Part shown: piece by piece, positions 6,741 through 60,618 of the stretch
How the letters are laid out: the number at the start of each line of letters is the position of its first letter
Position numbering within the stretch: the first letter of the stretch is position 1
Position numbers and translations under genes: made by a program
Notes under the pieces: model-generated
Told to the model about the DNA's origin: nothing
Databases searched by the model: none
The model's input: the letters and a program-made list of their open reading frames with translations, nothing else
Assembly: GCA_019828565.1 (NCBI GenBank)
Contig: JAHDYR010000067.1
Span: forward strand, 526,244-590,243
Reading direction: 5' to 3'
Source: Carpediemonas membranifera BICM
Lineage: Eukaryota; Protista; Fornicata
Length of the DNA: 64,000 nt

Positions 6741-8297
6741 TTAAATGGCTGGGTCGACTGGTGAGATCTCCATCGACCAACCGGGTACCCCACACGTGAC
6801 ATCTGACACATCAGCCACCTCAAACCACTGGCCGGCTGAGTCGCGGAAACAGGGGACATTGCTTGTCGTGCCATATGCCGTAGCCTCAATGGGGACACTG
6901 GCTGTACACTGGCGGTAGTCGTCAGACAGATGACTGCGGCCCTCGGTCCCCCAGACGATCTGATAATCGTCACACCAGAACCCCTTGACCCTCTCTGGGA
7001 ACCGGAGCGGGGTGGGTGTGAGGCACTTGTCGTCCCTGCGTTTTCCAGGCAGCAGGCCCGAGTTGGAGACGTGTATGGGAACTTTGCCAGCGAAGAGCAG
7101 CTGGCGGCCGCTGAGGAAGATGTTGAAAGAAAGGACGGAAGACATGACAGAATCGACGGAGGTCATGATCCGGTCGACTCTGTAGGGCAGATCCTCGAAG
7201 CCAGCCATCATACTATGGTGCCCGAGTCCCAGCTGGCCACAATAGTTGCCCCCGCTGATCATCTGCCGATCGCCCATGGAGAGGATGACAGTCGTTGCAT
7301 TGATCAGACCCACATGCATGATGTGATCTGGGACAAAGCCAGATGGCACAGCGACTGGGTGGAAGAGGGGTCTGTTCTCCTCCACGACTGGGCCGACATA
7401 CCATTCTGGATGTCCACCAGCCATGACAGTGCCGACCGAAGAGAGGATGAACGTCCGATCACAAATCAGCGACACACCAGTCACCATCCAGTGCTTCTCC
7501 CAGGGGGGCAGGCTGGCCTCGAGCTCAGCGACCTCGGCGCAGGCGGGGAAGGTAAGGCGGGTCGGGTCGACCTTAGACGACTTGAACCCCAGCTGGCCAT
7601 GACCGCTATCCCCCCAGCCCCACAGGCCCTTGGGCGTCCTGGCGATGCGGGTGAGGTCGTCGCTGTAGACCTCGAGGGCCCTGGGCATCCTGGCCCTGGT
7701 GAGGGCGGTGTGATAGTCAGTGTCGAGCATGAAGAGTCGGCCCATGTACATGCGGTGGTGATAAAATATGTAGGACCAAGCGTGCTGATAGCACTCGCCG
7801 TCCTTCTCTGCCACATTAAACGTGAAGAAGAACTTGCGGCAGAGGAACCAGAGGCACTTGGCCTCGGGGGCGAGAGCCTTGCGGATCTTGTCGTGCATCC
7901 TGGTAGTGTGTGGCTCCTCATCTTGAGCCTCCTCCAGCACCCTGTCCTCGAGGTCGGGGTTGGCCCCGCCACCCACCAGACACGCCCACACCGCGCCCTG
8001 GTTCAGCGTGTGCATGGCGACCGGGAGCTCCTCGCCATCCGCGAGCTCGACGTTCATGGACAGCTGGGGGCCGCTGGTGAGGATCGAGCGGGCGCGGTCG
8101 AGGAGGGCTTGCGCGGACGGTTCGAGAGGGGGGATCTCTGAGAGCGTGGCGAGGAGGCTTCTTGAAGTGCCTGGAGTAGGCGCACTGGATCAAGGATGGG
8201 ATGTACCAGAGATGGAGGCCGTTATGGCGACCGAGGCGCGATATGCGGAGGTAAGTGTGTCTTTGATGCACGTTGGAGAGGAACTAGCGCTGCTCAT
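6741..8297 (-). pseudogene. RCC1-like family copy A (5' part frameshifted and deleted; 438-aa ORF 6741-8057 remains)
   Basis: RCC1 motifs LWGWGDSGHGQLG and GGNYCGQLGLGH. The family start MSSASSS at 8297 is followed by a 1-nt deletion (~8205, leading to TGA) and a ~65-nt deletion relative to copy L. Confidence 0.75.
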
Positions 8298-8690
8298 TGG
8301 CTTCAGCGCTCAGTTCGGTGGTTGCCAAGTTCTGACTTCCGACTCGCCGACCGCCGACACCACTCACCATGAACCATGAGGCGTGACTGCGGCGAAGTAT
8401 CCAGATCCAGTGCATGGGGCTTCATTCTCTGCTCTCTGCGGCATTCACCACATTGGACCACCGTCGGGCACAGTTGAGCGGGCCTCAGTCCCCATACCAT
8501 TCTCAACGACTCACAGCGACTCGAGAATTCACCGGTTAGTGACGGAGTGGTCGAGATGCCGACAATCAGGGCCCGCTTCCCGACCCGGCTACAGCTTGAA
8601 GAAAGCTCGAGTGCAAACCAGCTAGCCCCCAAACCGAGCACCACCCAACCAACAAGAGACCTTTACAATCACCGAACCCACCTTCACCCA

Positions 8691-9809
8691 TCACTGCCTC
8701 GCTGGTCCTCCCTGACCAGGCCCTGCGCGTGCCATCATCGCCCTCGTCTTCTCAATCTTCCACAGCAGTGCCCTGTCGTAAAACTGCTCCTTGGCGAGCT
8801 TTCTTATGTACTTCAATCCGTCGATCGGCTCGACCTCGTCGTCACACATGGCCACGTAAATCTTGTACATGGCGTCCTCCAGGGCCTGGTTCTCGGCGTT
8901 GAGGCGCAACACCTGTCGGCGGGAGGCGTTGCCAGGGTCGGTTGCTTCGTCCAGCGCGTTTCTCTCGTGGGCGTCGACCTCGCCAGTCGAGGCTTCGAGG
9001 GAGGTAATCTGTCTGTCAATGTCTGCGATAGCAAGCTTCATGCGGCCGATCGAGGTCTCCAGCTGGCTGTGATCCCGTGCCATATTGCCAGCCATGCTCT
9101 GCTTCTGCTGGACCTCGCCGCATCTGCTGTCAATCTCCTTGCTGACGGTGTTACCGTGGCGAACAAGGTCTGACCGCTTGGCAGAGAGGTCGTTGAACAT
9201 CTTCTGGCTCAGCTGGGAGAGGAGCATCATTCTCTCCTGCTGGGGCTGCGGCTTATGCTGGTACTGGCCTGCGGGGTACTGCCCAGGCCGCTGGAAGCCC
9301 TGAACGGGCCTCTGCTGCGGCGGTGGCTGGTGTTGCTGCTGGGCTGAGCCGGAGGCGCCTGGGGGAGGGCCAGAGCTCACCGGGGGGTTCTTCCCGAACT
9401 CGATGCACAGCTGATTGACCGACTCGAGCAGAGTCGACTGGCCTGGCCGCCAGTTGCGTGGGTGGATGTAGTCCAGCGAGACCTTGCCGTACTTATCGAC
9501 CTGGGGGTGGTTGGGGCGGATGAACATGTCTCCTGTGGGGAGGACATATGGGATCGGGGGGGAAGAGGGGAATGTGGTCGGGATCCACAGGCCGACGGGG
9601 ATATTGTACTTGTTGTTGCGGTAGTACATGGGCACAGTGCCGCGGAGAACCACACAGTGGCTTGATTGAGCAGGAATAACCCCGAGAATCGGCTTAAGGT
9701 TGCTGTATGTGCGGAAACATTCGAGGATTTGATCGCTAACAAGCTTCATCTGTCTGTACGTACCAATCTTTGATAGCAAGTTGTTCAACTCACTTTGAAC
9801 GGCGTTCAT
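8691..9809 (-). CDS. VPS23: ESCRT-I subunit TSG101/Vps23
   Basis: N-terminal UEV domain (GTVPMYYRNNKYNIPVGLWIPTTFPSSPPIPYV...HPQVDKYGKV), P/Q-rich linker, coiled coil, and steadiness box (AENQALEDAMY...LKYIRKLAKEQFYDRAL). Confidence 0.92.
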   Translation of the reverse strand: MNAVQSELNNLLSKIGTYRQMKLVSDQILECFRTYSNLKPILGVIPAQSSHCVVLRGTVPMYYRNNKYNIPVGLWIPTTFPSSPPIPYVLPTGDMFIRPNHPQVDKYGKVSLDYIHPRNWRPGQSTLLESVNQLCIEFGKNPPVSSGPPPGASGSAQQQHQPPPQQRPVQGFQRPGQYPAGQYQHKPQPQQERMMLLSQLSQKMFNDLSAKRSDLVRHGNTVSKEIDSRCGEVQQKQSMAGNMARDHSQLETSIGRMKLAIADIDRQITSLEASTGEVDAHERNALDEATDPGNASRRQVLRLNAENQALEDAMYKIYVAMCDDEVEPIDGLKYIRKLAKEQFYDRALLWKIEKTRAMMARAGPGQGGPARQ

Positions 9810-17942: not shown

Positions 17943-19610
17943 TCAGGAAGTTTGCGATTGAGGGGTTGGGTCGACGTCGACCGGGGTGATGTCATGCCAC
18001 CTTTTAGGAGCCTTGCATTTGGCCAATTTAGCCACCCCATCCGAATCTCCCACCTTGAACCACTGGCCGGTGGAGTCACGGAAGCGGAGGGGGTTGTTCC
18101 TGAGTGCCGTCGCCTCAATAGGAACCATGGCAAGATCCCCATGCTGGCAGTAGTGGGTGACACCCTTGGTCCCCCAGACGATCAGAAAATCGCAGCACCA
18201 GAACCCCTTGACCCTCTCTGGGAACCGGAGCGGGGTGGGTGTGAGGCACTTGTCGTCCCTGCGTTTTCCAGGCAGCAGGCCCGAGTTGGAGACGTGTATG
18301 GGAACTTTGCCAGCGAAGAGCAGCTGGCGGCCGCTGAGGAAGATGTTGAAAGAAAGGACGGAAGACATGACAGAATCGACGGAGGTCATGATCCGGTCGA
18401 CTCTGTAGGGCAGATCCTCGAAGCCAGCCATCATACTATGGTGCCCGAGTCCCAGCTGGCCACAATAGTTGCCCCCGCTGATCATCTGCCGATCGCCCAT
18501 GGAGAGGATGACAGTCGTTGCATTGATCAGACCCACATGCATGATGTGATCTGGGACAAAGCCAGCGGGCACAGCGACTGGGTGGAAGAGGGGTCTGTTC
18601 TCCTCCACGACTGGGCCGACATACCATTCTGGATGTCCACCAGCCATGACAGTGCCGACCGAAGAGAGGATGAACGTCCGATCACAAATCAGCGACACAC
18701 CAGTCACCATCCAGTGCTTCTCCCAAGGGGGCAGGCTGGCCTCGAGCTCAGCGACCTCGGCGCAGGCGGGGAAGGTAAGGCGGGTCGGGGCGACCTTAGA
18801 CGACTTGAACCCCAGCTGGCCATGACCGCTATCCCCCCAGCCCCACAGGCCCTTGGGCGTCCTGGCGATGCGGGTGAGGTCGTCGCTGTAGACCTCGAGG
18901 GCCCTGGGCATCCTGGCCCTGGTGAGGGCGGTGTGCTTGGTAGTGTCGAGCATGAAGAGGCGGCCCATGTACATGCGGTGGTGATAAAATATGTAGGACC
19001 AAGCGTGCTGATAGCACTCGCCGTCCTTCTCTGCCACATTAAACGTGAAGAAGAACTTGCGGCAGAGGAACCAGAGGCACTTGGCCTCGGGGGCGAGAGC
19101 GTTGCGGATCTTGTCGTGCATCCTGGTAGTGTGTGGCTCCTCATCTTGAGCCCCCTGCAGCACCCTGTCCTCAAGGTCGGGGTTGGCCCCGCCACCCACC
19201 AGACACGCCCACACCGCGCCCTGGTTCAGCGTGTGCATGGCGACCGGGAGCTCCTCGCCATCCGCGAGCTCAACGTTCATTGACAGCGGGGGGCCGCTGG
19301 TGAGGATCGAGCGGGCGCGGTCGAGGAGGGCTTGCGCAGATGGTTCGAGAGGGGGGATCTCGGAGAGCGTTGCGATGAGGGATTCGAGGAAATTGGCATC
19401 TTTGCGCGCGTATTGGCTCACTTGCTCGTGGATAAACGCGTTGAACGTGGTCAACATGCGAGATCTGCGTGGAATTTGCTCGTCGAAGTGACGCTGGAAC
19501 GCACAGGCGATAAGCGAGGGGATATCGCCAGCAATACCACTCGCTGCCGTGATTGAGTGCCGATGGGCCGCGATCAGCGCGTCTCTCACCTTCTTGCCTC
19601 CATCTCTCAT
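17943..19610 (-). CDS. RCC1-like family copy B, intact, with divergent N-terminal allele
   Basis: Core nearly identical to copy A. The N-terminus RDALIAAHRHSITAASGIAGDIPSLIACAFQRHFDEQ is a distant homologue of the common N-terminus. First ATG at 19610. Confidence 0.8.
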   Translation of the reverse strand: MRDGGKKVRDALIAAHRHSITAASGIAGDIPSLIACAFQRHFDEQIPRRSRMLTTFNAFIHEQVSQYARKDANFLESLIATLSEIPPLEPSAQALLDRARSILTSGPPLSMNVELADGEELPVAMHTLNQGAVWACLVGGGANPDLEDRVLQGAQDEEPHTTRMHDKIRNALAPEAKCLWFLCRKFFFTFNVAEKDGECYQHAWSYIFYHHRMYMGRLFMLDTTKHTALTRARMPRALEVYSDDLTRIARTPKGLWGWGDSGHGQLGFKSSKVAPTRLTFPACAEVAELEASLPPWEKHWMVTGVSLICDRTFILSSVGTVMAGGHPEWYVGPVVEENRPLFHPVAVPAGFVPDHIMHVGLINATTVILSMGDRQMISGGNYCGQLGLGHHSMMAGFEDLPYRVDRIMTSVDSVMSSVLSFNIFLSGRQLLFAGKVPIHVSNSGLLPGKRRDDKCLTPTPLRFPERVKGFWCCDFLIVWGTKGVTHYCQHGDLAMVPIEATALRNNPLRFRDSTGQWFKVGDSDGVAKLAKCKAPKRWHDITPVDVDPTPQSQTS

Positions 19611-19807
19611 GTCGTCCAACTCAGCCACAGTCGGCCCAGTGACGCGACGCCCCGCAACTTAGAGTCGGTGTTGGGCCCGTTGTGGTTGAGTGGCTGGGCT
19701 GGCCGTCGCTAACCCTGGGGTTGACATCGCCTGCTCCCAGGTTGTCAATCAGTGTTCAGAGAGAGATCTTCCTTTACAAATTCACGGCAACACTAAGATG
19801 ACTGAGA

Positions 19808-22528: not shown

Positions 22529-22577
22529 TCGAGTTCTTGCTCCAAGATTTTTACAGACCAAGAGCTTGCTCCAAGAT

Positions 22578-23101: not shown

Positions 23102-23139
23102 ATGAAGTCAACCCCACTCCAAGTCTCTCAACCATTTAC

Positions 23140-41482: not shown

Positions 41483-41598
41483 GCTCTTTCCAAAATGATC
41501 CAATCATTCCATCCTCGCCAACTCTCCAACCCTCTATTTCAACAGTTTCATCAAATACATGCACACACGCTCTTTATTTGCTCTCAAGCATCATTTCT

Positions 41599-44347: not shown

Positions 44348-44552
44348 TGCGATTAATAAATATGGATAATAATTTATTACTGCCCATGGAGGATTGTTTA
44401 TGGCACTATAGGGTCGTTGGGCTGCTGTTCGTCGCGTGCTATCACTCAAGACGCAGCCACGCCATTGGCTAATGCTTCCAAGCTGGAAGCCGCTCGGGGC
44501 TCTTGTCATTCGTCTCACACGGGTCGCCAGTCTGTTTGCGATTCAAAAAAGT

Positions 44553-46186
44553 TTATGATTGAGGGCTTGGGTCGAAATCGACGGGAATGATGTCTTCCCG
44601 CCTTATGGGTACCTCGCACTCGACCAGCTCAGCCACCCCATCTGACTCACCCACCACCTTGAACCACTGGCCAGTTGAGTCACGGAAGCGGAGGGGGTCT
44701 TCAACATTAAACGCTGTCGCCTCAATTGGAACCATAGTACGATTCTCATCCTCGTAATAGTGGGTGACACCCTCAGTGACCCAGACCATCCGATCATAGT
44801 CACCCCAGAACCCCTTGACCCTCTCTGGGAACCGGAGCGGGGTGGGTGTGAGGCACTTGTAGTCCCTGCGTTTTCCAGGCAGCAGACCCGACTGGGCGAT
44901 ATGACGGGTTACCTTGCCAGCGAAGAGCAGCTGGCGGCCACCGAGGAAGACGGTGAATTCATCTGCAGAAGTGATGATCCGGTCGACCCCAAAGGGCAGA
45001 TCGACGAAGCCAGACATCTCATCATCGTGCCCGAGCCCCAGCTGGCCACATTCGTTGCCCCCGCTGATCATCTGCCGATCGCCCATGGAGAGGATGACAG
45101 TCGCGGTAAATAAACTTACCACATGCATGATGTGATCTGGGACAAAGCCAGATGGCACAGCGACTGGGTGGAAGCGGTGTCTGTTCTCCCGCTCGACACG
45201 GCCGGTAAACGATCTTGCCTCATATCCAGCCATGACAGTGTCGGCTGGGGTGAGGATGAACGTCTGACCGCTCATTATCGATACACCAGTCACCATCCCG
45301 TGCTTCTCCCAGGGGGGCAGGCTGGCCTCGAGCTCGGCGATGTTGGGGCAGGAGGGGAAGTTGAGGCGGGTCGGGTCGACAAATTGATCAAATGCTGACC
45401 TGAACCCAAGCTGGCTACGTCCGTTAGTGCCCCAGCCCCACAGACCCTTGGGCGTCCTGGCGATGTGGGTGAAGCCGTTGCTGTTGCTATAGACCTCGAG
45501 GGCCCTGGGCATCCTGGCCCTGGTGAAGGCGGTGTGATAGTCCGAGTTAAACATGAAGAGGCGGCCCATGTACATGCGGTGGTGGTAGCCATTGTAGCGT
45601 CCAGTGAACTGATAGAACTCGCCGTCCTTCTCGGCGACGTTCAGCGTGAAGAAGAACTTGCGGCAGAGGAACCAGAGCACTTGGCCTCGGGGGTGAGAGC
45701 GTTGCGGATCTTGTCGTGTGTCTCCCGATCACGAGGCCACCTCATTAGATTATCATCCAGCACCCTGTCCTCGAGGTCGGGGTTGGCCCCGCCGCCCACC
45801 AGACACGCCCACACCGCGCCCTGGTTCAGCGTGTGCATGGCGACCGGGAGCTCCTCGCCATCCGCGAGCTCGACGTTCATGGACAGCGGGGGGCCGCTGG
45901 TGAGGATCGAGCGGGCGCGGTCGAGGAGGGCTTGCGCGGTTGGTTTGAGAGGGGGGAGCTTGGAGAACGTGGCGAGGAGGGATTCGAGAGAAGGGGCGCT
46001 GGTTGGTGTAGAAGTGCCCTTGTCGTTGTGGATCGAGGGCATCTGCCCGTCGAAGTGCCTGGAGTAGGCGCACTGGATCAAGGATGGGATGTCCCCGGAG
46101 ATGGAGGCCGTCACAACAAGCGAGGCGCGATATGCGGTGATCAGCGCATCTCTTATGGCAGATGGCGAGGAACTAGCGCTGCTCAT
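44553..46186 (-). pseudogene. RCC1-like family copy G (1-nt frameshift ~45677)
   Basis: Split into ORFs 45641-46186 and 44553-45680; GCCAAGTGCTCTGG versus intact GCCAAGTGCCTCTGG. Confidence 0.8.
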
Positions 46187-46674
46187 TGGTTTCAGCGCTC
46201 AGTTCGGTGGTGCCCAAATTCTGACTGCCGACTCGCCGACCGCCGACGCCAGCTGGGAGGTCGGGAGATGAGACGTGCAGCCTCACTGGAGATGAGGCCT
46301 GACCACACCCGCGACACACTCCAACAGTGTCCCAGCTAACCCCACCTGGGTAGACCCACACGGCTCGAGAAACGCCTCACTCAGTCGACCACACAAGCGG
46401 ACTGACAGTAGCATGGCTGGGCTGCAGGAGGTAGAATGAGGAGCTATGGCCTGTGTTCCGCCTACTCGAGGTGGTCGGGGATCAGGATCCTCTCGAGGCT
46501 AGTCCGCCCTCGTGTGAGAAGCGTGCTTCTGCTGATTGGACCAGATGAGAAATGGCCTGGACGAAGCGGAGCAGTGACCAGTCGTTGCCAGTCGACTTTC
46601 GACGCCAGTCTTGATGAAGGAACAATAATCGTGAAAATGCCCTGTCACGACAAGAACCTTGTACCTTCGACACA

Positions 46675-48099
46675 ATGAACAATCCCTGGTATCCAGTCCT
46701 TGGAATACCAGCAGAATTCTTTCTCAAAGAGAGAGACGAGGCTGTTTCCATGCTGACGAGGACTCTGGGCATCTCTGTCGTCGATCTAGGCGAGGTACAC
46801 TTCTTTGCAGCGCTCAAGCAAGCGCATGCAGTGCCAAATAGTTCATCTGAGCTCACGATGACCAATGTTATGTGCATCTTGAAAGACGGCGAAGAGCGCC
46901 ACCACGAGCCGCTCAATACGCTAACAGGCGCCGCCAGCATCCAAATATCGTGTTCAAACCTCCATGCTGGCTTTCATTCCCTCTGCAAGTGGGAGATGGC
47001 GCGCTTTGGTCGACCCAAGGCAACGCTTGCCCTGGAGGCACCCTCGTCGCACAGGCAGAACTCCACCCTAGGCACGTTGACTGGCGACATAGAAGTGCTG
47101 AACACATGCATGGAACATGAGGAGATGATGTTCAAAGAGGCACCAACATGCCGCTTCTTCCACGGCGTTTCAGTCCTGTTCGCCAATGCCCCACAGTCAG
47201 CAGACGGCGAGATCCTCAGTGCATTCTTCACAGAACATCTCAAGTGTCGTGTGGCCAGTTGCTTCACCATGCCCGACCTGGCCGGGGCTGGGATCCTCAT
47301 CTTGCCACTCGCCGAGGACCTCGAGGCGTTGCTCGGCAACCTGCCACCTTTTCAAGGACGCAAGCTTTTTCTGATGCCTCTCGAGCACTTACGCGCCTTC
47401 CCGCCCTCTCTCCTCGTCAACGGAGTCCCCAAGGAGACCATACTCTCCTGTCCCGCCCTTCGCACTGAGCGGCAGGTCGCTGACTTCAAAGCCGAGGGTC
47501 TTGGTCTTGTTATCATGTATGACTCGGCCGAGACTGTCGAGTCAATCGAGCAAGACATGTTCTTCTCGCCCGAGCAGTTTACGGATGGGCAGCACTCACT
47601 CGCTGTCGATTTCTACAAGGGCACTCCTGAGGGCATGGTTGTCGCCCAAGACGTCGAATCCGTCCAGGACCCAGCCCCTGAACCAGAACTAGAGCCTGAG
47701 CCCGAGCCCGAGAGGACATACAGCTCACTCGCCCTCGACACCAGAGACGTCTACCTCCTCGACCGCGACTCGCTCCTGTTCACGACCCGCACCGAGTTCC
47801 CCCTCTACCGGGCCGACTCAAACACCAGGCCGACCCCCATTGGCGTGATGGCCCACACACTCGGCTGTATCCAGGCCGATGAGTACGTCACAGCCAAGGG
47901 GCCAGAGCGTCTCATGCCGTCGAGGATGCGGAACTATCAGTATAGCATGGCCGACATCGACGAGGACGGCATGCTTGCGCACTTTCCCGAGGGCCACCTC
48001 GAAGGGTCAGTCCGCGTCCAGCAGCAGGACTGCCTCGTGGTAGTTTCCAAGCTCAGTAATAAGCACCCTGGGGAGTCCCGTACAGCCAAAAGTTTATGA
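46675..48099 (+). pseudogene. PARG-like (DUF2263/TIGR02452-type) gene copy 1, truncated before the catalytic loop
   Basis: Nearly identical to copy 3 up to KH(P/H)GE; the stop is supplied by the antisense 3' end of RCC1 copy H; lacks 12 bp (LSIG) present in copies 2 and 3. Confidence 0.7.
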
Positions 48100-49728
48100 T
48101 TGAGGGGTTGGGTCGAAATCAACCGGGATGATGTCTTCCCGCCTTATGGGTACCTCGCACTCGACCAGCTCAGCCACCCCATCTGACTCACCCACCACCT
48201 TGAACCACTGGCCGGTGGAGTCGCGGAAGCAGAGGGGGTCTTCAACATTAAACGCTGTCGCCTCAATTGGAACCATAGTACGATTCTCATCCTCGTAATA
48301 GTGGGTGACACCCTCGGTCACCCAGACCATCCGATCATAGTCACCCCAGAACCCCTTGACCCTCTCTGGGAACCGGAGCGGGGTGGGTGTGAGGCACTTG
48401 TAGTCCCTGCGTTTTCCAGGCAGCAGACCCGACTGGGCGATATGACGGGTTACCTTGCCAGCGAAGAGCAGCTGGCGGCCACCGAGGAAGACGTTGAATT
48501 CATCTGCAGAAGTGATGATCCGGTCGACCCCAAAGGGCAGATCGACGAAGCCAGACATCTCATCATCGTGCCCGAGCCCCAGCTGGCCACATTCGTTGCC
48601 CCCGCTGATCATCTGCCGATCGCCCATGGAGAGGATGACAGTCGCGGTAAATAAACTTACCACATGCATGATGTGATCTGGGACAAAGCCAGATGGCACA
48701 GCGACTGGGTGGAAGCGGTGTCTGTTCTCCCGCTCGACACGGCCGGTAAACGATCTTGCCTCATATCCAGCCATGACAGTGTCGGCTGGGGTGAGGATGA
48801 ACGTCTGACCGCTCATTATCGATACACCAGTCACCATCCCGTGCTTCTCCCAGGGGGGCAGGCTGGCCTCGAGCTCGGCGATGTTGGGGCAGGAGGGGAA
48901 GTTGAGGCGGGTCGGGTCGACAAATTGATCAAATGCTGACCTGAACCCAAGCTGGCTACGTCCGTTAGTGCCCCAGCCCCACAGACCCTTGGGCGTCCTG
49001 GCGATGTGGGTGAAGCCGTTGCTGTTGCTATAGACCTCGAGGGCCCTGGGCATCCTGGCCCTGGTGAAGGCGGTGTGATAGTCCGAGTTAAACATGAAGA
49101 GGCGGCCCATGTATATGCGATGGTGGTAGCCATTGTAGCGTCCAGTGAACTGACAGCACTCGCCGTCCTTCTCTGCGACATTAAACGTGAAGAAGAACTT
49201 GCGGCAGAGGAACCAGAGGCACTTGGCCTCGGGGGCGAGAGCCTTGCGGATCTTGTCGTAAATCGTGGTACCACGTGACCCCAGCACTTGGGCCTCTTGC
49301 AGCACCCTGTCCTCGAGGTATGGGTTGGCCCCGCCACCCACCAGACACGCCCACACCGCGCCCTGGTTCAGCGTGTGCATGGCGACCGGGAGCTCCTCGC
49401 CATCCGCGAGCTCAACGTTCATTGACAGCGGGGGGCCGCTGGTGAGGATCGAGCGGGCGCGGTCGAGGAGGGCTTGCGCGGTTGGTTTGAGAGGGGGGAG
49501 CTTGGAGAACGTGGCGAGGAGGGATTCGAGAGAAGGGGCGCTGGTTGGTGTAGAAGTGCCCTTGTCGTTGTGGATCGAGGGCATCTGCCCGTCGAAGTGC
49601 CTGGAGTAGGCGCACTGGATCAAGGATGGGATGTCCCCGGAGATGGAGGCCGTCACAACAAGCGAGGCGCGATATGCGGTGATCAGCGCATCTCTTATGG
49701 CAGATGGCGAGGAACTAGCGCTGCTCAT
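48094..49728 (-). CDS. RCC1-like family copy H, intact (544 aa)
   Basis: Uninterrupted ORF with WGWGTNGRSQLG and GGNECGQLGLGH. Confidence 0.85.
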   Translation of the reverse strand: MSSASSSPSAIRDALITAYRASLVVTASISGDIPSLIQCAYSRHFDGQMPSIHNDKGTSTPTSAPSLESLLATFSKLPPLKPTAQALLDRARSILTSGPPLSMNVELADGEELPVAMHTLNQGAVWACLVGGGANPYLEDRVLQEAQVLGSRGTTIYDKIRKALAPEAKCLWFLCRKFFFTFNVAEKDGECCQFTGRYNGYHHRIYMGRLFMFNSDYHTAFTRARMPRALEVYSNSNGFTHIARTPKGLWGWGTNGRSQLGFRSAFDQFVDPTRLNFPSCPNIAELEASLPPWEKHGMVTGVSIMSGQTFILTPADTVMAGYEARSFTGRVERENRHRFHPVAVPSGFVPDHIMHVVSLFTATVILSMGDRQMISGGNECGQLGLGHDDEMSGFVDLPFGVDRIITSADEFNVFLGGRQLLFAGKVTRHIAQSGLLPGKRRDYKCLTPTPLRFPERVKGFWGDYDRMVWVTEGVTHYYEDENRTMVPIEATAFNVEDPLCFRDSTGQWFKVVGESDGVAELVECEVPIRREDIIPVDFDPTPQS

Positions 49729-50216
49729 TGGTTTCAGCGCTCAGCTCGGTGGTGCCCAAATTCTGACTGCCGACTCGCCGACCGCCGACGCCAGCTGGGA
49801 GGTCGGGAGATGAGACGTGCAGCCTCACTGGAGATGAGGCCTGACCACACCCGCGACACACTCCAACAGTGTCCCAGCTAACCCCACCTGGGTAGACCCA
49901 CACGGCTCGAGAAACGCCTCACTCAGTCGACCACACAAGCGGACTGACAGTAGCATGGCTGGGCTGCAGGAGGTAGAATGAGGAGCTATGGCCTGTGTTC
50001 CGCCTACTCGAGGTGGTCGGGGATCAGGATCCTCTCGAGGCTAGTCCGCCCTCGTGTGAGAAGCGTGCTTCTGCTGATTGGACCAGATGAGAAATGGCCT
50101 GGACGAAGCGGAGCAGTGACCAGTCGTTGCCAGTCGACTTTCGACGCCAGTCTTGATGAAGGAACAATAATCGTGAAAATGCCCTGTCACGACAAGAACC
50201 TTGTACCTTCGACACA

Positions 50217-51653
50217 ATGAACAATCCCTGGTATCCAGTCCTTGGAATACCAGCAGAATTCTTTCTCAAAGAGAGAGACGAGGCTGTTTCCATGCTGACG
50301 AGGACTCTGGGCATCTCTGTCGTCGATCTAGGCGAGGTACACTTCTTTGCAGCGCTCAAGCAAGCGCATGCAGTGCCAAATAGTTCATCTGAGCTCACGA
50401 TGACCAATGTTATGTGCATCTTGAAAGACGGCGAAGAGCGCCACCACCTGAGCATCGGCGAGCCGCTCAATACGCTAACAGGCGCCGCCAGCATCCAAAT
50501 ATCGTGTTCAAACCTCCATGCTGGCTTTCATTCCCTCTGCAAGTGGGAGATGGCGCGCTTTGGTCGACCCAAGGCAACGCTTGCCCTGGAGGCACCCTCG
50601 TCGCACAGGCAGAACTCCACCCTAGGCACGTTGACTGGCGACATAGAAGTGCTGAACACATGCATGGAACATGAGGAGATGATGTTCAAAGAGGCACCAA
50701 CATGCCGCTTCTTCCACGGCGTTTCAGTCCTGTTCGCCAATGCCCCACAGTCAGCAGACGGCGAGATCCTCAGTGCATTCTTCACAGAACATCTCAAGTG
50801 TCGTGTGGCCAGTTGCTTCACCATGCCCGACCTGGCCGGGGCTGGGATCCTCATCTTGCCACTCGCCGAGGACCTCGAGGCGTTGCTCGGCAACCTGCCA
50901 CCTTTTCAAGGACGCAAGCTTTTTCTGATGCCTCTCGAGCACTTACGCGCCTTCCCGCCCTCTCTCCTCGTCAACGGAGTCCCCAAGGAGACCATACTCT
51001 CCTGTCCCGCCCTTCGCACTGAGCGGCAGGTCGCTGACTTCAAAGCCGAGGGTCTTGGTCTTGTTATCATGTATGACTCGGCCGAGACTGTCGAGTCAAT
51101 CGAGCAAGACATGTTCTTCTCGCCCGAGCAGTTTACGGATGGGCAGCACTCACTCGCTGTCGATTTCTACAAGGGCACTCCTGAGGGCATGGTTGTCGCC
51201 CAAGACGTCGAATCCGTCCAGGACCCAGCCCCTGAACCAGAACTAGAGCCTGAGCCCGAGCCCGAGAGGACATACAGCTCACTCGCCCTCGACACCAGAG
51301 ACGTCTACCTCCTCGACCGCGACTCGCTCCTGTTCACGACCCGCACCGAGTTCCCCCTCTACCGGGCCGACTCAAACACCAGGCCGACCCCCATTGGCGT
51401 GATGGCCCACACACTCGGCTGTATCCAGGCCGATGAGTACGTCACAGCCAAGGGGCCAGAGCGTCTCATGCCGTCGAGGATGCGGAACTATCAGTATAGC
51501 ATGGCCGACATCGACGAGGACGGCATGCTTGCGCACTTTCCCGAGGGCCACCTCGAAGGGTCAGTCCGCGTCCAGCAGCAGGACTGCCTCGTGGTAGTTT
51601 CCAAGCTCAGTAATAAGCACCCTGGGGAGTCCCGTACAGCCAAAAGTTTATGA
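50217..51653 (+). pseudogene. PARG-like gene copy 2, truncated before the catalytic loop
   Basis: 478-aa ORF with the same junction as copy 1. Confidence 0.7.
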
Positions 51654-53302
51654 TTGAGGGGTTGGGTCGAAATCAACCGGGATGATGTCTTCCCGCCTTA
51701 TGGGTACCTCGCACTCGACCAGCTCAGCCACCCCATCTGACTCACCCACCACCTTGAACCACTGGCCGGTGGAGTCGCGGAATAATTGGATGCAATTGTC
51801 ATTGATCAATGTTCTATGGCATGCCATAGCCTCAAAGGGCACACAGATCTGGTCGTCGTGTTCGTTGTCGCACAAATGAGTGCGGCCCTCGGTCACCCAG
51901 ACCATCCGATCATAGTCACCCCAGAACCCCTTGACCCTCTCTGGGAACCGGAGCGGGGTGGGTGTGAGGCACTTGTAGTCCCTGCGTTTTCCAGGCAGCA
52001 GACCCGACTGGGCGATATGACGGGTTACCTTGCCAGCGAAGAGCAGCTGGCGGCCACCGAGGAAGACGTTGAATTCATCTGCAGAAGTGATGATCCGGTC
52101 GACCCCAAAGGGCAGATCGACGAAGCCAGACATCTCATCATCGTGCCCGAGCCCCAGCTGGCCACATTCGTTGCCCCCGCTGATCATCTGCCGATCGCCC
52201 ATGGAGAGGATGACAGTCGCGGTAAATAAACTTACCACATGCATGATGTGATCTGGGACAAAGCCAGATGGCACAGCGACTGGGTGGAAGCGGTGTCTGT
52301 TCTCCCGCTCGACACGGCCGGTAAACGATCTTGCCTCATATCCAGCCATGACAGTGTCGGCTGGGGTGAGGATGAACGTCTGACCGCTCATTATCGATAC
52401 ACCAGTCACCATCCCGTGCTTCTCCCAGGGGGCAGGCTGGCCTCGAGCTCGGCGATGTTGGGGCAGGAGGGGAAGTTGAGGCGGGTCGGGTCGACAAATT
52501 GATCAAATGCTGACCTGAACCCAAGCTGGCTACGTCCGTTAGTGCCCCAGCCCCACAGACCCTTGGGCGTCCTGGCGATGTGGGTGAAGCCGTTGCTGTT
52601 GCTATAGACCTCGAGGGCCCTGGGCATCCTGGCCCTGGTGAAGGCGGTGTGATAGTCCGAGTTAAACATGAAGAGGCGGCCCATGTACATGCGATGGTGG
52701 TAGCCATTGTAGCGTCCAGTGAACTGACAGCACTCGCCGTCCTTCTCTGCGACATTAAACGTGAAGAAGAACTTGCGGCAGAGGAACCAGAGGCACTTGG
52801 CCTCGGGGGCGAGAGCCTTGCGGATCTTGTCGTGTGTCTCGGTCCTGCGTGGCTCCTCCTCTTGAGCCTCCTTCAGCACATTGTCCTCGAGGTATGGGTT
52901 GGCCCCGCCACCCATGAGACACGCCCACACCGCGCCCTGGTTCAGCGTGTGCATGGCGACCGGGAGCTCCTCGCCATCCGCGAGCTCAACGTTCATTGAC
53001 AGCGGGGGGCCGCTGGTGAGGATCGAGCGGGCGCGGTCGAGGAGGGCTTGCGCGGTTGGTTTGAGAGGGGGGAGCTTGGAGAACGTGGCGAGGAGGGATT
53101 CGAGAGAAGGGGCGCTGGTTGGTGTAGAAGTGCCCTTGTCGTTGTGGATCGAGGGCATCTGCCCGTCGAAGTGCCTGGAGTAGGCGCACTGGATCAAGGA
53201 TGGGATGTCCCCGGAGATGGAGGCCGTCACAACAAGCGAGGCGCGATATGCGGTGATCAGCGCATCTCTTATGGCAGATGGCGAGGAACTAGCGCTGCTC
53301 AT
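51648..53302 (-). pseudogene. RCC1-like family copy I (frameshift in G-run ~52428, possibly a sequencing error)
   Basis: ORFs 52406-53302 and 51648-52412; G5 instead of G6 in CCAGGGGGGCAGG. Confidence 0.75.
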
Positions 53303-53790
53303 TGGTTTCAGCGCTCAGCTCGGTGGTGCCCAAATTCTGACTGCCGACTCGCCGACCGCCGACGCCAGCTGGGAGGTCGGGAGATGAGACGTGCAGCCTC
53401 ACTGGAGATGAGGCCTGACCACACCCGCGACACACTCCAACAGTGTCCCAGCTAACCCCACCTGGGTAGACCCACACGGCTCGAGAAACGCCTCACTCAG
53501 TCGACCACACAAGCGGACTGACAGTAGCATGGCTGGGCTGCAGGAGGTAGAATGAGGAGCTATGGCCTGTGTTCCGCCTACTCGAGGTGGTCGGGGATCA
53601 GGATCCTCTCGAGGCTAGTCCGCCCTCGTGTGAGAAGCGTGCTTCTGCTGATTGGACCAGATGAGAAATGGCCTGGACGAAGCGGAGCAGTGACCAGTCG
53701 TTGCCAGTCGACTTTCGACGCCAGTCTTGATGAAGGAACAATAATCGTGAAAATGCCCTGTCACGACAAGAACCTTGTACCTTCGACACA

Positions 53791-55290
53791 ATGAACAATC
53801 CCTGGTATCCAGTCCTTGGAATACCAGCAGAATTCTTTCTCAAAGAGAGAGACGAGGCTGTTTCCATGCTGACGAGGACTCTGGGCATCTCTGTCGTCGA
53901 TCTAGGCGAGGTACACTTCTTTGCAGCGCTCAAGCAAGCGCATGCAGTGCCAAATAGTTCATCTGAGCTCACGATGACCAATGTTATGTGCATCTTGAAA
54001 GACGGCGAAGAGCGCCACCACCTGAGCATCGGCGAGCCGCTCAATACGCTAACAGGCGCCGCCAGCATCCAAATATCGTGTTCAAACCTCCATGCTGGCT
54101 TTCATTCCCTCTGCAGAGTGGGAGATGGCGCGCTTTGGTCGACCCAAGGCAACGCTTGCCCTGGAGGCACCCTCGTCGCACAGGCAGAACTCCACCCTAG
54201 GCACGTTGACTGGCGACATAGAAGTGCTGAACACATGCATGGAACATGAGGAGATGATGTTCAAAGAGGCACCAACATGCCGCTTCTTCCACGGCGTTTC
54301 AGTCCTGTTCGCCAATGCCCCACAGTCAGCAGACGGCGAGATCCTCAGTGCATTCTTCACAGAACATCTCAAGTGTCGTGTGGCCAGTTGCTTCACCATG
54401 CCCGACCTGGCCGGGGCTGGGATCCTCATCTGCCACTCGCCGAGGACCTCGAGGCGTTGCTCGGCAACCTGCCACCTTTCCAAGGACGCAAGCTTTTTCT
54501 GATGCCTCTCGAGCACTTACGCGCCTTCCCGCCCTCTCTCCTCGTCAACGGAGTCCCCAAGGAGACCATACTCTCCTGTCCCGCCCTTCGCACTGAGCGG
54601 CAGGTCGCTGACTTCAAAGCCGAGGGTCTTGGTCTTGTTATCATGTATGACTCGGCCGAGACTGTCGAGTCAATCGAGCAAGACATGTTCTTCTCGCCCG
54701 AGCAGTTTACGGATGGGCAGCACTCACTCGCTGTCGATTTCTACAAGGGCACTCCTGAGGGCATGGTTGTCGCCCAAGACGTCGAATCCGTCCAGGACCC
54801 AGCCCCTGAACCAGAACTAGAGCCTGAGCCCGAGCCCGAGAGGACATACAGCTCACTCGCCCTCGACACCAGAGACGTCTACCTCCTCGACCGCGACTCG
54901 CTCCTGTTCACGACCCGCACCGAGTTCCCCCTCTACCGGGCCGACTCAAACACCAGGCCGACCCCCATTGGCGTGATGGCCCACACACTCGGCTGTATCC
55001 AGGCCGATGAGTACGTCACAGCCAAGGGGCCAGAGCGTCTCATGCCGTCGAGGATGCGGAACTATCAGTATAGCATGGCCGACATCGACGAGGACGGCAT
55101 GCTTGCGCACTTTCCCGAGGGCCACCTCGAAGGGTCAGTCCGCGTCCAGCAGCAGGACTGCCTCGTGGTAGTTTCCAAGCTCAGTAATAAGCACCATGGG
55201 GAGTGTATCGCGTGCCTCAACATGGCTAATGAGTACCGCGTCGGCGGGGGCTACAACACGGGCGCCCGGGCACAAGAGGAGGAGCTCATC
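53791..55290 (+). pseudogene. PARG-like gene copy 3, retaining the catalytic-loop signature, fused in frame to RCC1 fragment J
   Basis: HTLGCIQADEYVTAKG, VRVQQQDCLVVVSKL, CLNMANEYRVGGGYNTGARAQEEEL (GGG-X7-QEE). +1 (~54116) and -1 (~54431) indels relative to copies 1 and 2. Confidence 0.78.
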
Positions 55291-55689
55291 AACGTCTTCC
55301 TCGGTGGCCGCCAGCTTCTCTTCGCTGGTCGAGTTCCCCTCCATATTGCCCAGTCGGGTCTGCTGCCTGGAAAACGCAGGGACTACAAGTGCCTCACACC
55401 CACCCCGCTCCGGTTCCCAGAGAGGGTTAAGCGGTTCTGGGTCGATGATGGTCAGATCGTCTGGGTGACCGAGGGTGTCACCCACTATTACGAGGATGAG
55501 AATCGTACTATAGTCCCCATTGAGGCGATAGCGTTCAACAAATGCCCCCTCCGCTTCTGCGACTCCACCGGCCAGTGGTTCAAGGTGGTGGGTGAGTCAG
55601 ATGGGGTGGCTGAGCTGGTCGAGTGCGAGGTACCCATAAGGCGGGAAGACATCATTCCCGTCGATTTCGACCAAAGCCCTCAATCATAA
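55289..55689 (+). pseudogene. RCC1-like family copy J, 3' fragment
   Basis: Starts at (TC)AACGTCTTCCTCGGT (NVFLGGRQLLFAG) and ends PQS-TAAAC. Confidence 0.85.
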
Positions 55690-56142
55690 ACAAAAGTGCG
55701 GGCAAAATTGGTGCCTCTCGAGTTTCACATGAGCTCACGGGCACCCTGGAGTGCCGAGGCGCGGGCGAGACCCCAGCGGGACCGGGTCGCCGTGCTAAGA
55801 GGTTGAATCTGGTGTGAGTTTCGGATATGAATCGAGGTGATTCGATCCGGGAGAATCGATTGCGCAATCGACTGAAAATGGAGTCAGACCAAGAGAAATG
55901 GCGGAAGAGACCGCCGGACAGATAAGAGATAAATGTCCAACCCTCCTTGGGTAACAGTGTATATGTTGTGTGGCCAGCAAAATCTGGCCAATCATTTCAG
56001 TCAACGTCACCCGAGTCCACCGTGTCACATTCAAAGGCACGCATGTAGAGAGGGCCAACAGTGCATTTAATCGACACACTGGACAACGATATTGCACAGA
56101 TCGTTAAACTTCACGAAGCGCGGCAGTGAGTGCTCCTTGCAT

Positions 56143-56374
56143 GTCGATGATGGTCTGGGTGACCGAGGGCCGCAGCCATCTGTCTGACGACTACCGCCAG
56201 TGTACAGCCAGTGTCCCCATTGAGGCTACGGCATATGGCACGACAAGCAATGTCCCCTGTTTCCGCGACTCAGCCGGCCAGTGGTTTGAGGCGGCTGATG
56301 TGTCAGATGTCACGTGTGGGGTACCCGGTTGGTCGATGGAGATCTCACCAGTCGCCGTCGACCCAGCGTTTTAG
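56143..56374 (+). pseudogene. RCC1-like family copy K, short 3' fragment with a copy-A-type tail
   Basis: VWVTEGRSHLSDDYRQCTASVPIEATAYGTTSNVPC...GWSMEISPV is nearly identical to the 3' end of copy A, ~49 kb away. Confidence 0.85.
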
Positions 56375-56753
56375 TTATAAACCCTGTTAACATCTCGGAG
56401 GAAGATCAAGTGACTTCGTCGCGAGTGTGCTGACCGTGGGACGAGGTCCTCCCCCAGGAGTGGCTGGTCCCGGCTGGTCGGATGTAGATATGCAGCAGTA
56501 TGTAAATTACCTAAACTTCGTTTAGCGTGACTGGGCAGGCGACCTGTGGACGCAGGGCGGGGGCCTCGACTCAACGCGGGGACGACGAGCGACCGCCCGC
56601 ATTCCGTACGAACAACTAAAGACTGGGCCGGGCAGTGATCGTTGCCGTAATGCTGCCAAGCTCTATCACTTGAGACGTTCAATAATCATTCATCGCCCAA
56701 ACAATTGGGAGAAGTACACCAAGTTCACAAAGTCAGGAAACGACGTTACCACA

Positions 56754-58805: not shown

Positions 58806-59060
58806 GCCGCGGTTTGTAAAGATGCTGTTTATTGGCAGTGTCTCGTGTTTAGGGTGTCATGCGCGGGCAAGAAGCGGACGTCGGATCAGATTCGAGCCAT
58901 GCTGATGGTGGCAACTGTGCTGCTGGACAGAGCTCGACGCACAGCTGAAAGGGGCGGACAGGCAGGCCTACCACCGTCATACTCATGCCTCACATCCCTA
59001 CACCGCAGCTGGCGTCGGCGGTCGGCGAGTCGGCAACCACCGAGCTGAGCGCTGAGACCA

Positions 59061-60618
59061 ATGAGCAGCGCTAGTTCCTCGCCATCTGCCATCAGAGATG
59101 CGCTGATCACCGCATATCGCGCCTCGCTTGTTGCAACGGCCTCCATCTCTGGGGACATCCCATCCTTGATCCAGTGCGCCTACTCCAGGCACTTCAAGAA
59201 GCAGATGCCCTCGATCCACAACGCAGAGAGCACTGATACACCAGCGAGCGCCCCTTCTCTCGAATCCCTCCTCGCCACGCTCTCAGAGATCCCCCCTCTC
59301 AAACCAACCGCGCAAGCCCTCCTCGACCGCGCCCGCTCGATCCTCACCAGCGGCCCCCCGCTGTCCATGAACGTCGAGCTCGCGGATGGCGAGGAGCTCC
59401 CGGTCGCCATGCACACGCTGAACCAGGGCGCGGTGGGGGCGTGTCTGGTGGGCGGCGGGGCCAACCCCGACCTCGAGGACAGGGTGCTCTCACCCCCGAG
59501 GCCAAGTGCTCTGGTTCCTCTGCCGCAAGTTCTTCTTCACGCTGAACGTCGCCGAGAAGGACGGCGAGTTCTATCAGTTCACTGGACGCTACAATGGCTA
59601 CCACCACCGCATGTACATGGGCCGCCTCTTCATGCTCGACACTGACAAGCACACCGCCCTCACCAGGGCCAGGATGCCCAGGGCCCTCGAGGTCTACAGC
59701 GACTGGTTCACCCACATCGCCAGGACGCCCAAGGGTCTGTGGGGCTGGGGGCAGAACGGGTTTGGCCAGCTGGGGTTCGAGTCATTTGAGTTCAACGACC
59801 CGACCCGCCTCACCTTCCCCGCCTGCCCCAAGGTCGCCGAGCTCGAGGCCAGCCTGCCCCTCTGGGAGAAGCACAGGATGGTGACTGCTGTGTCGATAGA
59901 GGATTACCAGACGTTCATCCTCACCCCAGCCGACACTGTCATGGCTGGATATGAGGCAAGATGGTTTACCGGCCGTGTCGAGCGGGAGAACAGACACCGC
60001 TTCCACCCAGTCGCTGTGCCATCTGGCTTTGTCCCAGATCACATCATGCATGTGGTAAGTTTATTTACCGCGACTGTCATCCTCTCCATGGGCGATCGGC
60101 AGATGATCAGCGGGGGCAACGAATGTGGCCAGCTGGGGCTCGGGCACGATGATGAGATGTCTGGCTTCGTCGATCTGCCCTTTGGGGTCGACCGGATCAT
60201 CACTTCTGCAGATGAATTCACCGTCTTCCTCGGTGGCCGCCAGCTGCTCTTCGCTGGCAAAGTTCCCATCCATATCGCCCAGTCGGGCCTGCTGCCTGGA
60301 AAACGCAGGGACTACAAGTGCCTCACACCCACCCCGCTCCGGTTCCCAGAGAGGGTTAAGCGGTTCTGGGTCGATGATGGTCAGATCGTCTGGGTGACCG
60401 AGGGTGTCACCCACTATTACGAGGATGAGAATCGTACTATAGTCCCCATTGAGGCGACAGCGTTCAACAAATGCCCCCTCCGCTTCCGTGACTCAACTGG
60501 CCAGTGGTTCAAGGTGGTGGGTGAGTCAGATGGGGTGGCTGAGCTGGTCGAGTCCGAGGTGGCCGAATCGTGGGAAGACATCATTCCCGTCGATGTCGAC
60601 CAAAGCCCTCAATCATAA
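59061..60618 (+). pseudogene. RCC1-like family copy L (variable cassette deleted, plus frameshift ~59509)
   Basis: ~61-nt deletion relative to copy G between GCT trinucleotides, and the same GCCAAGTGCTCTGG 1-nt deletion as copy G. Confidence 0.8.

What the first reader, a model, noticed from the sequence alone, without database searches (positions are those of the whole stretch)
6741..60618. Candidate novel system: combinatorially diversified repertoire of RCC1-like propeller genes (12 copies, ~23% of window)
Seen: copies share near-invariant DNA framework blocks separated by about ten short variable segments whose alleles assort independently. F has the A/B alleles YSDDLT..WGDSGHG and SLICDRT but the G/H/I alleles MFNSDYHTAF and KVTRH. 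E has KSSKVDP (A/B) with SIMSGQT (D/G/H/I). RFWVDDGQ is shared by J and L, ESEVAESW by C and L, and the RSHLSDDYRQC tail by A and K. No single tree explains this patchwork. No signal peptide or TM segment is evident. Known: RCC1 blades bind partners through loops, and segmental gene conversion builds mosaic repertoires (trypanosome VSG, Borrelia vlsE). Inference: an intracellular variable-loop binder repertoire (defence or genetic conflict) maintained by gene conversion, with pseudogenes and fragments as donors.
Basis: partly seen in the sequence, partly recalled or inferred. Interest (0 to 1): 0.9.

Follow-up and report, generated by a model that had tools for sequence, protein, structure and literature searches.

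The report
Shuffled RCC1-propeller gene repertoire in Carpediemonas
A harmless free-living protist carries about 200 related genes for a propeller-shaped protein, and neighbouring copies swap short DNA patches, giving almost every copy its own mix of surface loops, as expected for a varied set of binding proteins whose targets are still unknown.

Summary
The window (Carpediemonas membranifera, JAHDYR010000067.1) holds 12 copies (24.6% of bases) of a family with about 200 or more members on at least 29 contigs and no relative found outside this species. Each gene encodes a ~190-aa helical domain with no known match plus a 7-bladed RCC1-like propeller. Among 39 copies, 18 variable segments carry 5-14 alleles each, and 29 of 30 near-full copies are unique combinations. 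PHI (p=0.0005) and AU tests reject a single tree. Exchange is mostly local and linkage decays over about 1 kb, so alleles are not independent. Variation concentrates in the a-b and c-d loops on one propeller face. The framework is under purifying selection (omega about 0.4), loops have omega about 1 or above, and loop indels are nearly all in frame. A by-eye F-box resemblance failed all tests. Best reading: a locally duplicating, non-directionally converting repertoire of cytosolic binders, probably for biotic conflict (inferred). It is a known evolutionary regime on a new, apparently undescribed scaffold.

The parts
6741..8362 (-). Copy A. Start codon at 8297; broken by a 1-nt deletion at codon 31 and a 65-nt deletion at codon 48; open from 8057 to 6741
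17943..19628 (-). Copy B. Intact ORF (561 aa from GTG; NCBI model 555 aa) with a variant N-terminus also seen on contig 25
22578..23088 (+). Copy C. 3' fragment (blades 4-7) just upstream of a PHD-finger gene on the other strand
23140..24118 (+). Copy D. 5'-truncated, propeller only; directly abuts C
24122..25010 (+). Host segment co-duplicated with D-type 3' ends; contains the nuclear RNase P RNA gene (24497-24751). Three more copies lie elsewhere on the same contig
33797..33861 (+). Conserved non-coding motif upstream of the start codon, shared by the copies that retain their 5' end (putative promoter/5' UTR; inferred)
33862..34425 (+). Copy E (intact, 538 aa): N-terminal all-helical domain, residues 1-188, no known sequence or fold match; variable insertion at residues 141-160
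34462..35478 (+). Copy E: seven-bladed RCC1-like beta-propeller, residues 201-532, with variable a-b and c-d loops in every blade
38794..40475 (-). Copy F. Start codon at 40361; shared 1-nt deletion at codon 31 and a 51-nt in-frame deletion; open from the second Met (474 aa)
44547..46272 (-). Copy G. 1-nt deletion at codon 170, in a tract shared with L; first unit of the 3.55-kb triplication
46675..48099 (+). Truncated PARG-like gene, unit 1 of the triplication (passenger)
48088..49814 (-). Copy H. Intact ORF 49728-48094, 544 aa
50217..51653 (+). Truncated PARG-like gene, unit 2 (passenger)
51642..53388 (-). Copy I. 1-nt deletion in a C run at codon 286 (may be a sequencing error); blade 6-7 alleles shared with copies 20-50 kb away
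53791..55288 (+). PARG-like gene, unit 3, cut just after the catalytic GGG..QEE motif and fused in frame to fragment J
55289..55692 (+). Copy J. 3' fragment (blades 5-7)
56149..56382 (+). Copy K. Short 3' fragment sharing A's tail allele (94% identical)
58984..60627 (+). Copy L. CDS 59061-60618; net 62-nt frameshifting loss over codons 142-170

Best explanation
This is the youngest, most active cluster of a Carpediemonas membranifera-specific family of about 200 genes encoding soluble two-domain proteins: a conserved helical N-domain and a seven-bladed RCC1-like propeller. SHOWN from sequence: gene-sized units (upstream motif to just past the stop, with variable captured flanks) have been copied at DNA level into intergenic spaces within about 200-kb neighbourhoods. 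Neighbouring copies exchange tracts of tens to several hundred nt by ectopic gene conversion with no donor/recipient asymmetry. This homogenises the framework and reshuffles old, divergent loop alleles, so nearly every copy has a unique set of up to 14 loops on one propeller face. Purifying selection keeps the fold; the a-b loops show excess amino-acid change. INFERRED: the variable face is a ligand-binding surface, the conserved N-domain couples to a constant host partner, and the repertoire serves recognition of changing foreign targets (viral, bacterial or selfish-element proteins). Many copies die by frameshift or truncation yet remain in the exchange pool (birth-and-death plus concerted evolution). 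Confidence is about 0.85 for the evolutionary mechanism and about 0.5 for the conflict/recognition function.
For: Fold: AlphaFold2 mean pLDDT 87; helices in residues 8-188, strands in 201-532; all top Foldseek hits are RCC1-like domains (UVR8, RCC1, HERC, RPGR; E 2e-10). Recombination. Repertoire: 18 segments with 5-14 alleles each; 29 of 30 haplotypes unique. Locality: divergence rises with genomic distance (Mantel r=0.65, p=0.0002), and few alleles are shared between the contig-67 and contig-25 clusters. One face: amino-acid entropy a-b 1.94 and c-d 1.04 vs b-c 0.33 and d-a 0.38 bits (p=1e-10), with the same ranking across 89 family members. Selection: isolated point differences give omega 0.37-0.46 in the framework (p<=1e-4) vs 1.0-2.3 in loops (Fisher p=0.01). 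In a-b loops codon positions 1 and 2 differ more than position 3 (0.45, 0.43, 0.37), and position-2 divergence exceeds flanking four-fold divergence in 7 of 7 a-b loops. A FUBAR-like scan on local trees gave 117 purifying and 10 positively selected sites, 5 of them in these loops. Loop length alleles are nearly all multiples of 3. Framework GC at four-fold sites is 0.81 vs 0.56-0.73 in neighbouring genes, as expected from GC-biased conversion. Flanks and an RNase P RNA gene hitch-hike, and no poly-A tail or shared terminal repeat is seen at the copy ends. Precedent for RCC1-like domains as antiviral interfaces under positive selection: HERC5/6 (PMC6002735).
Against: Pooled maximum-likelihood omega for a-b loops is 1.0 and for c-d loops below 1; no loop class is significantly above 1 in the point-mutation count. 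Loop alignments with indels inflate apparent change, and residual recombination can create false positive sites. Only about 10 of 39 copies are intact and full length, and null lesions spread, so selection on single copies is weak. There is no expression, localisation or target data. Face assignment rests on predicted secondary structure and propeller topology, not atomic coordinates, and the C-terminal linker (opposite face) and the N-domain insertion also vary. The N-domain has no assignable function.
Confidence: 0.6

Rival explanations
1. Self-propagating duplication core with merely relaxed loops. The gene is a recombination hotspot (like primate core duplicons) in a genome proposed to rely on recombination-dependent replication. 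Conversion homogenises whatever is similar, loops drift and escape homogenisation, and diversity has no recognition role.
For: Copies sit singly between housekeeping genes in both orientations, carry variable flanks, duplicate the RNase P RNA gene and truncate a PARG-like gene. Pooled loop omega is about 1. About three quarters of copies are broken and nulls spread. The genome paper proposes recombination-based replication (PMC8516963).
Against: Framework omega is about 0.4 and loop indels are in frame. Codon positions 1 and 2 exceed position 3 in a-b loops. Many full-length members persist down to 25-40% identity on many contigs, so the protein has long been selected. This rival is compatible with the best explanation as the mode of spread.
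Confidence: 0.25
2. Substrate receptors of a cullin-type ubiquitin ligase. Residues 116-180 would be a degenerate F-box with an insertion, making this an F-box-like expansion that targets variable foreign proteins for degradation.
For: By eye, distant members show a leucine/proline-led helix and a conserved L-x-x-L-C-K-x-F helix spaced like an F-box. The predicted structure is helical there. Conserved N-domain plus variable propeller is the usual F-box layout (own knowledge). An unrelated F-box+RCC1 protein exists among the hits (P0210).
Against: No Pfam F-box hit in 99 N-domains, 10 distant proteins or 10 short-insert motifs. hhalign against 12 real F-boxes (10 checked and confirmed by Pfam) gave probability 0.1-1.2%, no better than control regions; a gapped F-box score on real sequences equalled shuffled ones. 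No PDB or viral fold match.
Confidence: 0.12
3. VSG/vlsE-type programmed variation: silent pseudogene cassettes donate segments unidirectionally to one or a few expression sites.
For: Invariant blocks alternate with variable segments; fragments and pseudogenes are abundant. Intact copies have more private alleles (3.5 vs 0.7, p=0.001), though this is confounded by sparser sampling of contig 25.
Against: Intact and broken copies are equally mosaic. Frameshifts are transferred between copies. There are many intact copies with the same upstream motif, no cassette array and no membrane segment.
Confidence: 0.06
4. Assembly or polishing chimeras among near-identical repeats.
For: The assembly used R9.4 nanopore reads with Pilon-type polishing. 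The G/H/I triplication is 96-98% identical overall, and its passenger units differ by one 12-nt indel and three single-base changes. Some single-base frameshifts may be errors.
Against: Copies are 1.7 kb, embedded in unique genes, with 83x long-read coverage in a haploid. 63% of same-allele pairs are not identical, so tracts have aged. In-frame indel alleles and linked SNP-plus-frameshift tracts recur across 200 kb. Selection signatures follow the protein fold.
Confidence: 0.04
5. The unit is cargo of a conventional transposon or a retrocopy.
For: Dispersed, both orientations, fairly sharp 5' boundary; gypsy and LINE elements lie at cluster edges.
Against: No transposase or RT in the unit; no terminal repeat or poly-A tail evident in the end alignments; flanks of variable length are shared between distant copies.
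Confidence: 0.03

Closest known systems
Podospora anserina NWD/HNWD WD40-propeller NLR family (PMC4986451)
   Same: Cytosolic beta-propeller sensors; sequence exchange within and between family members; diversifying positions on one propeller surface; non-self recognition.
   Different: NWD genes shuffle near-identical whole repeats and have NACHT plus effector domains in about 10 genes. Here blades are mutually divergent, exchange is position-for-position between paralogs, the scaffold is RCC1-type, there is no NTPase domain, and there are about 200 genes.
Borrelia vlsE / Anaplasma msp2 / trypanosome VSG segmental conversion (PMC4534519; VSG from own knowledge)
   Same: Alternating invariant and variable segments; mosaic products; tracts up to a few hundred bp.
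   Different: Those are surface antigens of parasites with silent donors and a dedicated expression site. Here the protein appears soluble, the host is free-living, and exchange is non-directional among many full genes.
Primate core duplicons such as LCR16a/NPIP (PMC7419210)
   Same: A fast-evolving gene core that seeds interspersed local duplications, drags variable flanking host sequence, creates fusions and rearrangements, and shows positive selection.
   Different: Here the unit is only about 1.7 kb with no intron evident, sits in a compact haploid protist genome, and has a folded repeat domain with discrete loop alleles.
Plant NB-LRR clusters and nematode/plant F-box expansions (own knowledge)
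   Same: Clustered birth-and-death families, sequence exchange among neighbours, variable ligand-binding repeats with a conserved adaptor domain, many pseudogenes.
   Different: Different domains; F-box membership was tested and not met; no immune function is shown here.
RCC1-like domain superfamily (RCC1, UVR8, HERC RLD, RPGR)
   Same: Seven-bladed propeller with GQLG motifs in blades 2 and 4; HERC5/6 RLDs are positively selected antiviral interfaces (PMC6002735).
   Different: Strongly degenerate (scores below Pfam WD40_RLD cut-off), with helical insertions and a novel N-domain; not an orthologue of the Ran exchange factor.

Membership tests
RCC1-like domain superfamily | Seven-bladed beta-propeller of RCC1 type | tested here: met
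   AF2 model with propeller pLDDT about 95; top 40+ Foldseek PDB hits are RCC1-like, E 2e-10 to 1e-7, TM 0.33-0.36 of the full query
RCC1-like domain superfamily | Sequence match to RCC1 repeat profiles | tested here: met
   75 of 89 members match PF25390 and 69 match PF00415 at E<=1 (best 3.5e-12); the profile hits RPGR/HERC1 at 5e-6 to 1e-5; most scores are below the curated cut-off
RCC1-like domain superfamily | Ran guanine-nucleotide exchange / chromatin binding (true RCC1) | not testable with these tools
   No assay; the hypervariable face argues against a fixed partner there
F-box proteins | F-box motif detectable by profile | tested here: not met
   no Pfam hit, hhalign probability <=1.2%, gapped score equal to shuffles
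F-box proteins | Binds Skp1 | not testable with these tools
   No complex prediction or pull-down available
VSG/vlsE-type antigenic variation | Segmental gene conversion producing mosaics | tested here: met
VSG/vlsE-type antigenic variation | Unidirectional flow from silent donors to an expression site | tested here: not met
   Intact and broken copies equally mosaic; lesions spread
VSG/vlsE-type antigenic variation | Surface-exposed, anchored product | tested here: not met
   No hydrophobic segment of note; signal peptide judged by hydropathy only
VSG/vlsE-type antigenic variation | Mono-allelic expression and switching within a clone | not testable with these tools
   No RNA-seq or serial clones
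Fungal NWD-type NLRs | NACHT/NB-ARC domain | tested here: not met
   No NTPase Pfam hit in 89 members
Fungal NWD-type NLRs | Concerted evolution plus diversification on one propeller face | tested here: met
   (between paralogs rather than between internal repeats)
Core-duplicon-like hotspot | Interspersed local duplications of a core with variable captured flanks | tested here: met
Core-duplicon-like hotspot | Recurrent independent expansion in separate lineages | tested here: inconclusive
   No homologue found outside C. membranifera; whether C. frisia is in the searched collections is unknown
Transposon / retrocopy | Terminal repeats, target-site duplication, poly-A tail or transposase | tested here: not met
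   None evident in the end alignments of about 30 copies; target-site duplication could not be judged without an empty site

The most novel reading that the evidence does not exclude
A free-living protist runs an ongoing, conversion-driven combinatorial library of intracellular receptors on an RCC1 scaffold: new loop combinations arise within clonal lineages on ecological time scales, are selected by viruses or bacteria, and a novel N-terminal domain routes bound targets to a constant effector. This would be an innate, antibody-like repertoire in a unicellular eukaryote, possibly a by-product of its ORC-less, recombination-dependent replication.
Probability: 0.15. Interest if true: 0.88.

Novelty: new variant of a known kind. 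Interest (0 to 1): 0.62.

Why it matters
About 2.4% or more of this protist's predicted genes belong to one family annotated almost entirely as hypothetical; it is not mentioned in the genome paper's text or supplements, and no held paper names both the species and RCC1. How free-living protists recognise viruses and bacteria is largely open. This family offers a concrete, testable candidate with a mapped variable face, an orphan conserved domain and a measurable diversification process. It also gives a natural read-out of ectopic recombination in an organism proposed to replicate by recombination, and a naturally loop-tolerant RCC1 scaffold.

Tried and rejected
F-box identity of residues 116-180: proposed from the alignment, tested with Pfam, PDB profile search, Foldseek and hhalign against real F-boxes; not met. 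Weak ankyrin and EF-hand-protein matches to the N-domain cover short motifs or a single helix pair and were treated as chance. Homologues outside Carpediemonas: none in viral or metagenome contigs; only generic RCC1-repeat proteins in the representative library. The impression that synonymous divergence is much higher in loops is largely a counting effect of multi-base codon differences; at comparable four-fold sites it is 0.157 vs 0.125. The 745-890-nt repeat beside D looked like a mobile element but holds the RNase P RNA gene. Literature hits for RCC1 in green-algal papers were strain names. An IQ-TREE codon run failed and was replaced by my own grid method, which was run at one window size and has no recombination null. 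The contig is not human, and the genes are not toxins or effectors.
Full report
Source. A protein search with copy E returned 133 hits; every named one is from Carpediemonas membranifera, a free-living metamonad with a 24.2-Mb, 69-contig, apparently haploid genome of 8,300 predicted proteins (PMC8516963). The window is JAHDYR010000067.1, record position = window position + 526,243. Its other genes are ordinary single-copy eukaryotic genes (UEV/Vps23, WD40, aromatic lyase, PHD finger, nucleoside transporter, PfkB, M16 peptidase, proteasome subunits).

Observation. Twelve copies cover 15,738 nt, 24.6% of the window. B, E and H are intact; A, F, G, I and L are full-length but frameshifted or deleted; C, D, J and K are 3' fragments. 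G, H and I belong to one 3.55-kb tandem triplication with a truncated PARG-like gene. PHI gives p=0.0005 with or without the tandem duplicates.

Extent of the family. 199 of 229 retrieved proteins carry the family's N-domain; these are cluster representatives, so the gene count is about 200 or more. Members lie on at least 29 contigs and range down to about 25-40% identity. All 16 additional members checked by name are C. membranifera. An exhaustive profile search of 1.84 billion representatives found, among the best 150 listed, only family members and generic RCC1-repeat proteins. Viral and metagenome contigs gave nothing. The youngest copies form clusters in which single copies sit between housekeeping genes in both orientations: contig 67 at 463-682 kb and contig 25 at 920-1016 kb.

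Protein. AlphaFold2 (89 sequences, mean pLDDT 87, pTM 0.70) gives helices over residues 8-188 and a beta-propeller over 201-532. Foldseek matches the propeller to UVR8, RCC1L, RCC1, RPGR and HERC domains. The strand list gives seven blades, with the C-terminal strand closing blade 1 (inference from DSSP and RCC1 repeat logic). The N-domain is confidently modelled (pLDDT 88.5) but matches nothing in Pfam, PDB sequences, PDB folds or viral folds. Its last 65 residues look F-box-like by eye, but every test was negative, so it is not filed as an F-box. Hydropathy shows no membrane segment.

Recombination in 39 copies. Stitching the window with nine fetched loci gave 39 copies longer than 380 nt. 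Eighteen variable segments carry 5-14 alleles each, and 29 of 30 near-complete copies have distinct combinations. Trees of the three thirds of the propeller reject each other. Identical tracts reach 379 nt between copies that differ by 8-19%, against an expectation of about 25-50 nt. Linkage between segments is 0.31 below 150 nt and decays to about zero beyond 1 kb, so alleles travel in tracts rather than independently. Divergence rises with genomic distance (0.10 within 25 kb, about 0.19-0.21 beyond 100 kb, 0.23 between contigs; Mantel r=0.65, p=0.0002), and most alleles are private to a cluster. Non-coding flanks are mosaic too; E shares 389 nt of 5' flank at 98% with a copy about 60 kb away. 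Framework four-fold sites are 81% GC vs 56-73% in ten neighbouring genes and 62% in the loops, consistent with GC-biased conversion (inference).

Direction. Intact and broken copies need the same number of donor segments (5.1 vs 4.8, p=0.63). One 1-nt deletion with a linked substitution at codon 31 occurs in seven copies, a 65-nt deletion in four, and other lesions in two or three. Exchange therefore moves null alleles as well, unlike the silent-donor/expression-site design of vlsE (PMC4534519). About 10 of the 39 copies are intact and full length.

Where the variation lies. In a four-stranded blade the a-b and c-d connections fall on the same face, and b-c and d-a on the other (geometry). Mean amino-acid entropy is 1.94 (a-b), 1.04 (c-d), 0.33 (b-c) and 0.38 (d-a) bits, p=1e-10 for the two faces; the ranking holds across 89 family members. 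All seven blades have variable a-b and c-d loops. Exceptions are the C-terminal linker and an insertion in the N-domain. Variable loop residues are enriched in D, E, Y, N, S and C.

Selection. The framework is conserved: omega 0.37-0.46 from isolated point differences (p<=1e-4), and 117 sites are under purifying selection. Loops give omega 1.0-2.3 by that count, none significantly above 1, but higher than the framework (p=0.01). Pooled likelihood gives omega 1.0 for a-b loops and below 1 for c-d loops, with ten sites at posterior >=0.9 for positive selection, five of them in these loops. In a-b loops codon positions 1 and 2 differ more than position 3, and position-2 divergence exceeds flanking four-fold divergence in 7 of 7 a-b loops and 5 of 7 c-d loops (Wilcoxon p=0.005). 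Loop length variants are nearly all in frame. Verdict: coding function is well supported; diversifying selection on a-b loops is probable but not proven.

Artefact. The assembly is nanopore plus short-read polishing, so single-base frameshifts such as that in I and the exact triplication need read confirmation. The mosaics themselves are unlikely to be artefacts: 1,138 of 1,817 same-allele pairs have diverged, copies are short and anchored in unique genes at 83x long-read depth, and the variation follows the fold.

Mode of spread. Copy ends show no evident terminal repeat or poly-A tail, and the captured flanks vary in length. A D-type 3' end has been co-duplicated with the RNase P RNA gene, which is present in at least four copies on this contig, and fragment J is fused in frame into a PARG-like gene just after its catalytic motif. 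This resembles a core-duplicon hotspot (PMC7419210). A link to the recombination-based replication proposed for this organism is speculation.

Comparison and verdict. It works like the Podospora NWD propeller receptors (PMC4986451) and like clustered resistance-gene or F-box expansions (own knowledge), but belongs to none of them. RCC1-like domains can be antiviral interfaces under positive selection (PMC6002735). I found no description of this family in the held literature. It is a real, well-supported mosaic repertoire on a new scaffold, produced by a known evolutionary regime, with function inferred rather than shown: new variant of a known kind, interest 0.62.

Noticed in passing
window 24122-25010 (gene 24497-24751, +); L010 4402-4656 and 7785-8040; L008 18727-18981: The nuclear RNase P RNA gene occurs in at least four 99%-identical copies within about 75 kb: two directly 3' of family copies, one about 750 nt upstream of one of those copies in inverted orientation, and one next to a gypsy fragment. 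RNase P RNA is normally single copy (own knowledge).
   Followed up: partly
window 46675-48099, 50217-51653, 53791-55689: A gene with a microbial-type PARG catalytic domain (PF10021) is triplicated and truncated at or just before its catalytic motif; the third copy is fused in frame to propeller fragment J. The missing 3' part was not located.
   Followed up: partly
L003 1976-5598 (-); L008 about 19370-21430; L009 206-7209: Gypsy-type LTR retrotransposon sequence lies within and at the far edge of the contig-67 cluster (a 2,069-nt piece is 99.4% identical at two sites about 167 kb apart). A LINE and gypsy-like RT lie at the end of contig 25, where the second cluster ends. Whether clusters mark centromeric or subtelomeric regions is untested.
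   Followed up: no
window 3-5270 (-): A stop-free frame of at least 1,756 codons (ankyrin repeats, propeller-like regions, FYVE-like end, by eye) runs off the window start, yet no gene is called there in the public annotation shown for L008.
   Followed up: no
window 42634-43571 (+): FG-repeat nucleoporin-like gene (Nup2/Nup50-like with a Ran-binding-type C-terminus, by eye) with twelve 72/84-nt repeats at 97% identity.
   Followed up: no
copies A, F and five copies at record 592-628 kb, codon 31: The same 1-nt deletion has spread to seven copies whose downstream frames are mostly still open from the second Met; these may be nulls or N-terminally shortened variants.
   Followed up: partly
window 35655-38489 (-): A 944-aa M16 peptidase with a hydrophobic N-terminus; it reads like the bacterial PqqL type and may be a lateral acquisition (not tested).
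   Followed up: no
P0028, P0041, P0121, P0163 and other long members: Several annotated family members are fused to unrelated domains (Vps37, prenyltransferase) or contain more than one unit; these may be real fusions like PARG-J or gene-model merges.
   Followed up: no
P0210 (ENA contig, 16 kb): An unrelated 425-aa protein with a weak F-box_4 match followed by near-identical RCC1 repeats; origin not determined.
   Followed up: partly
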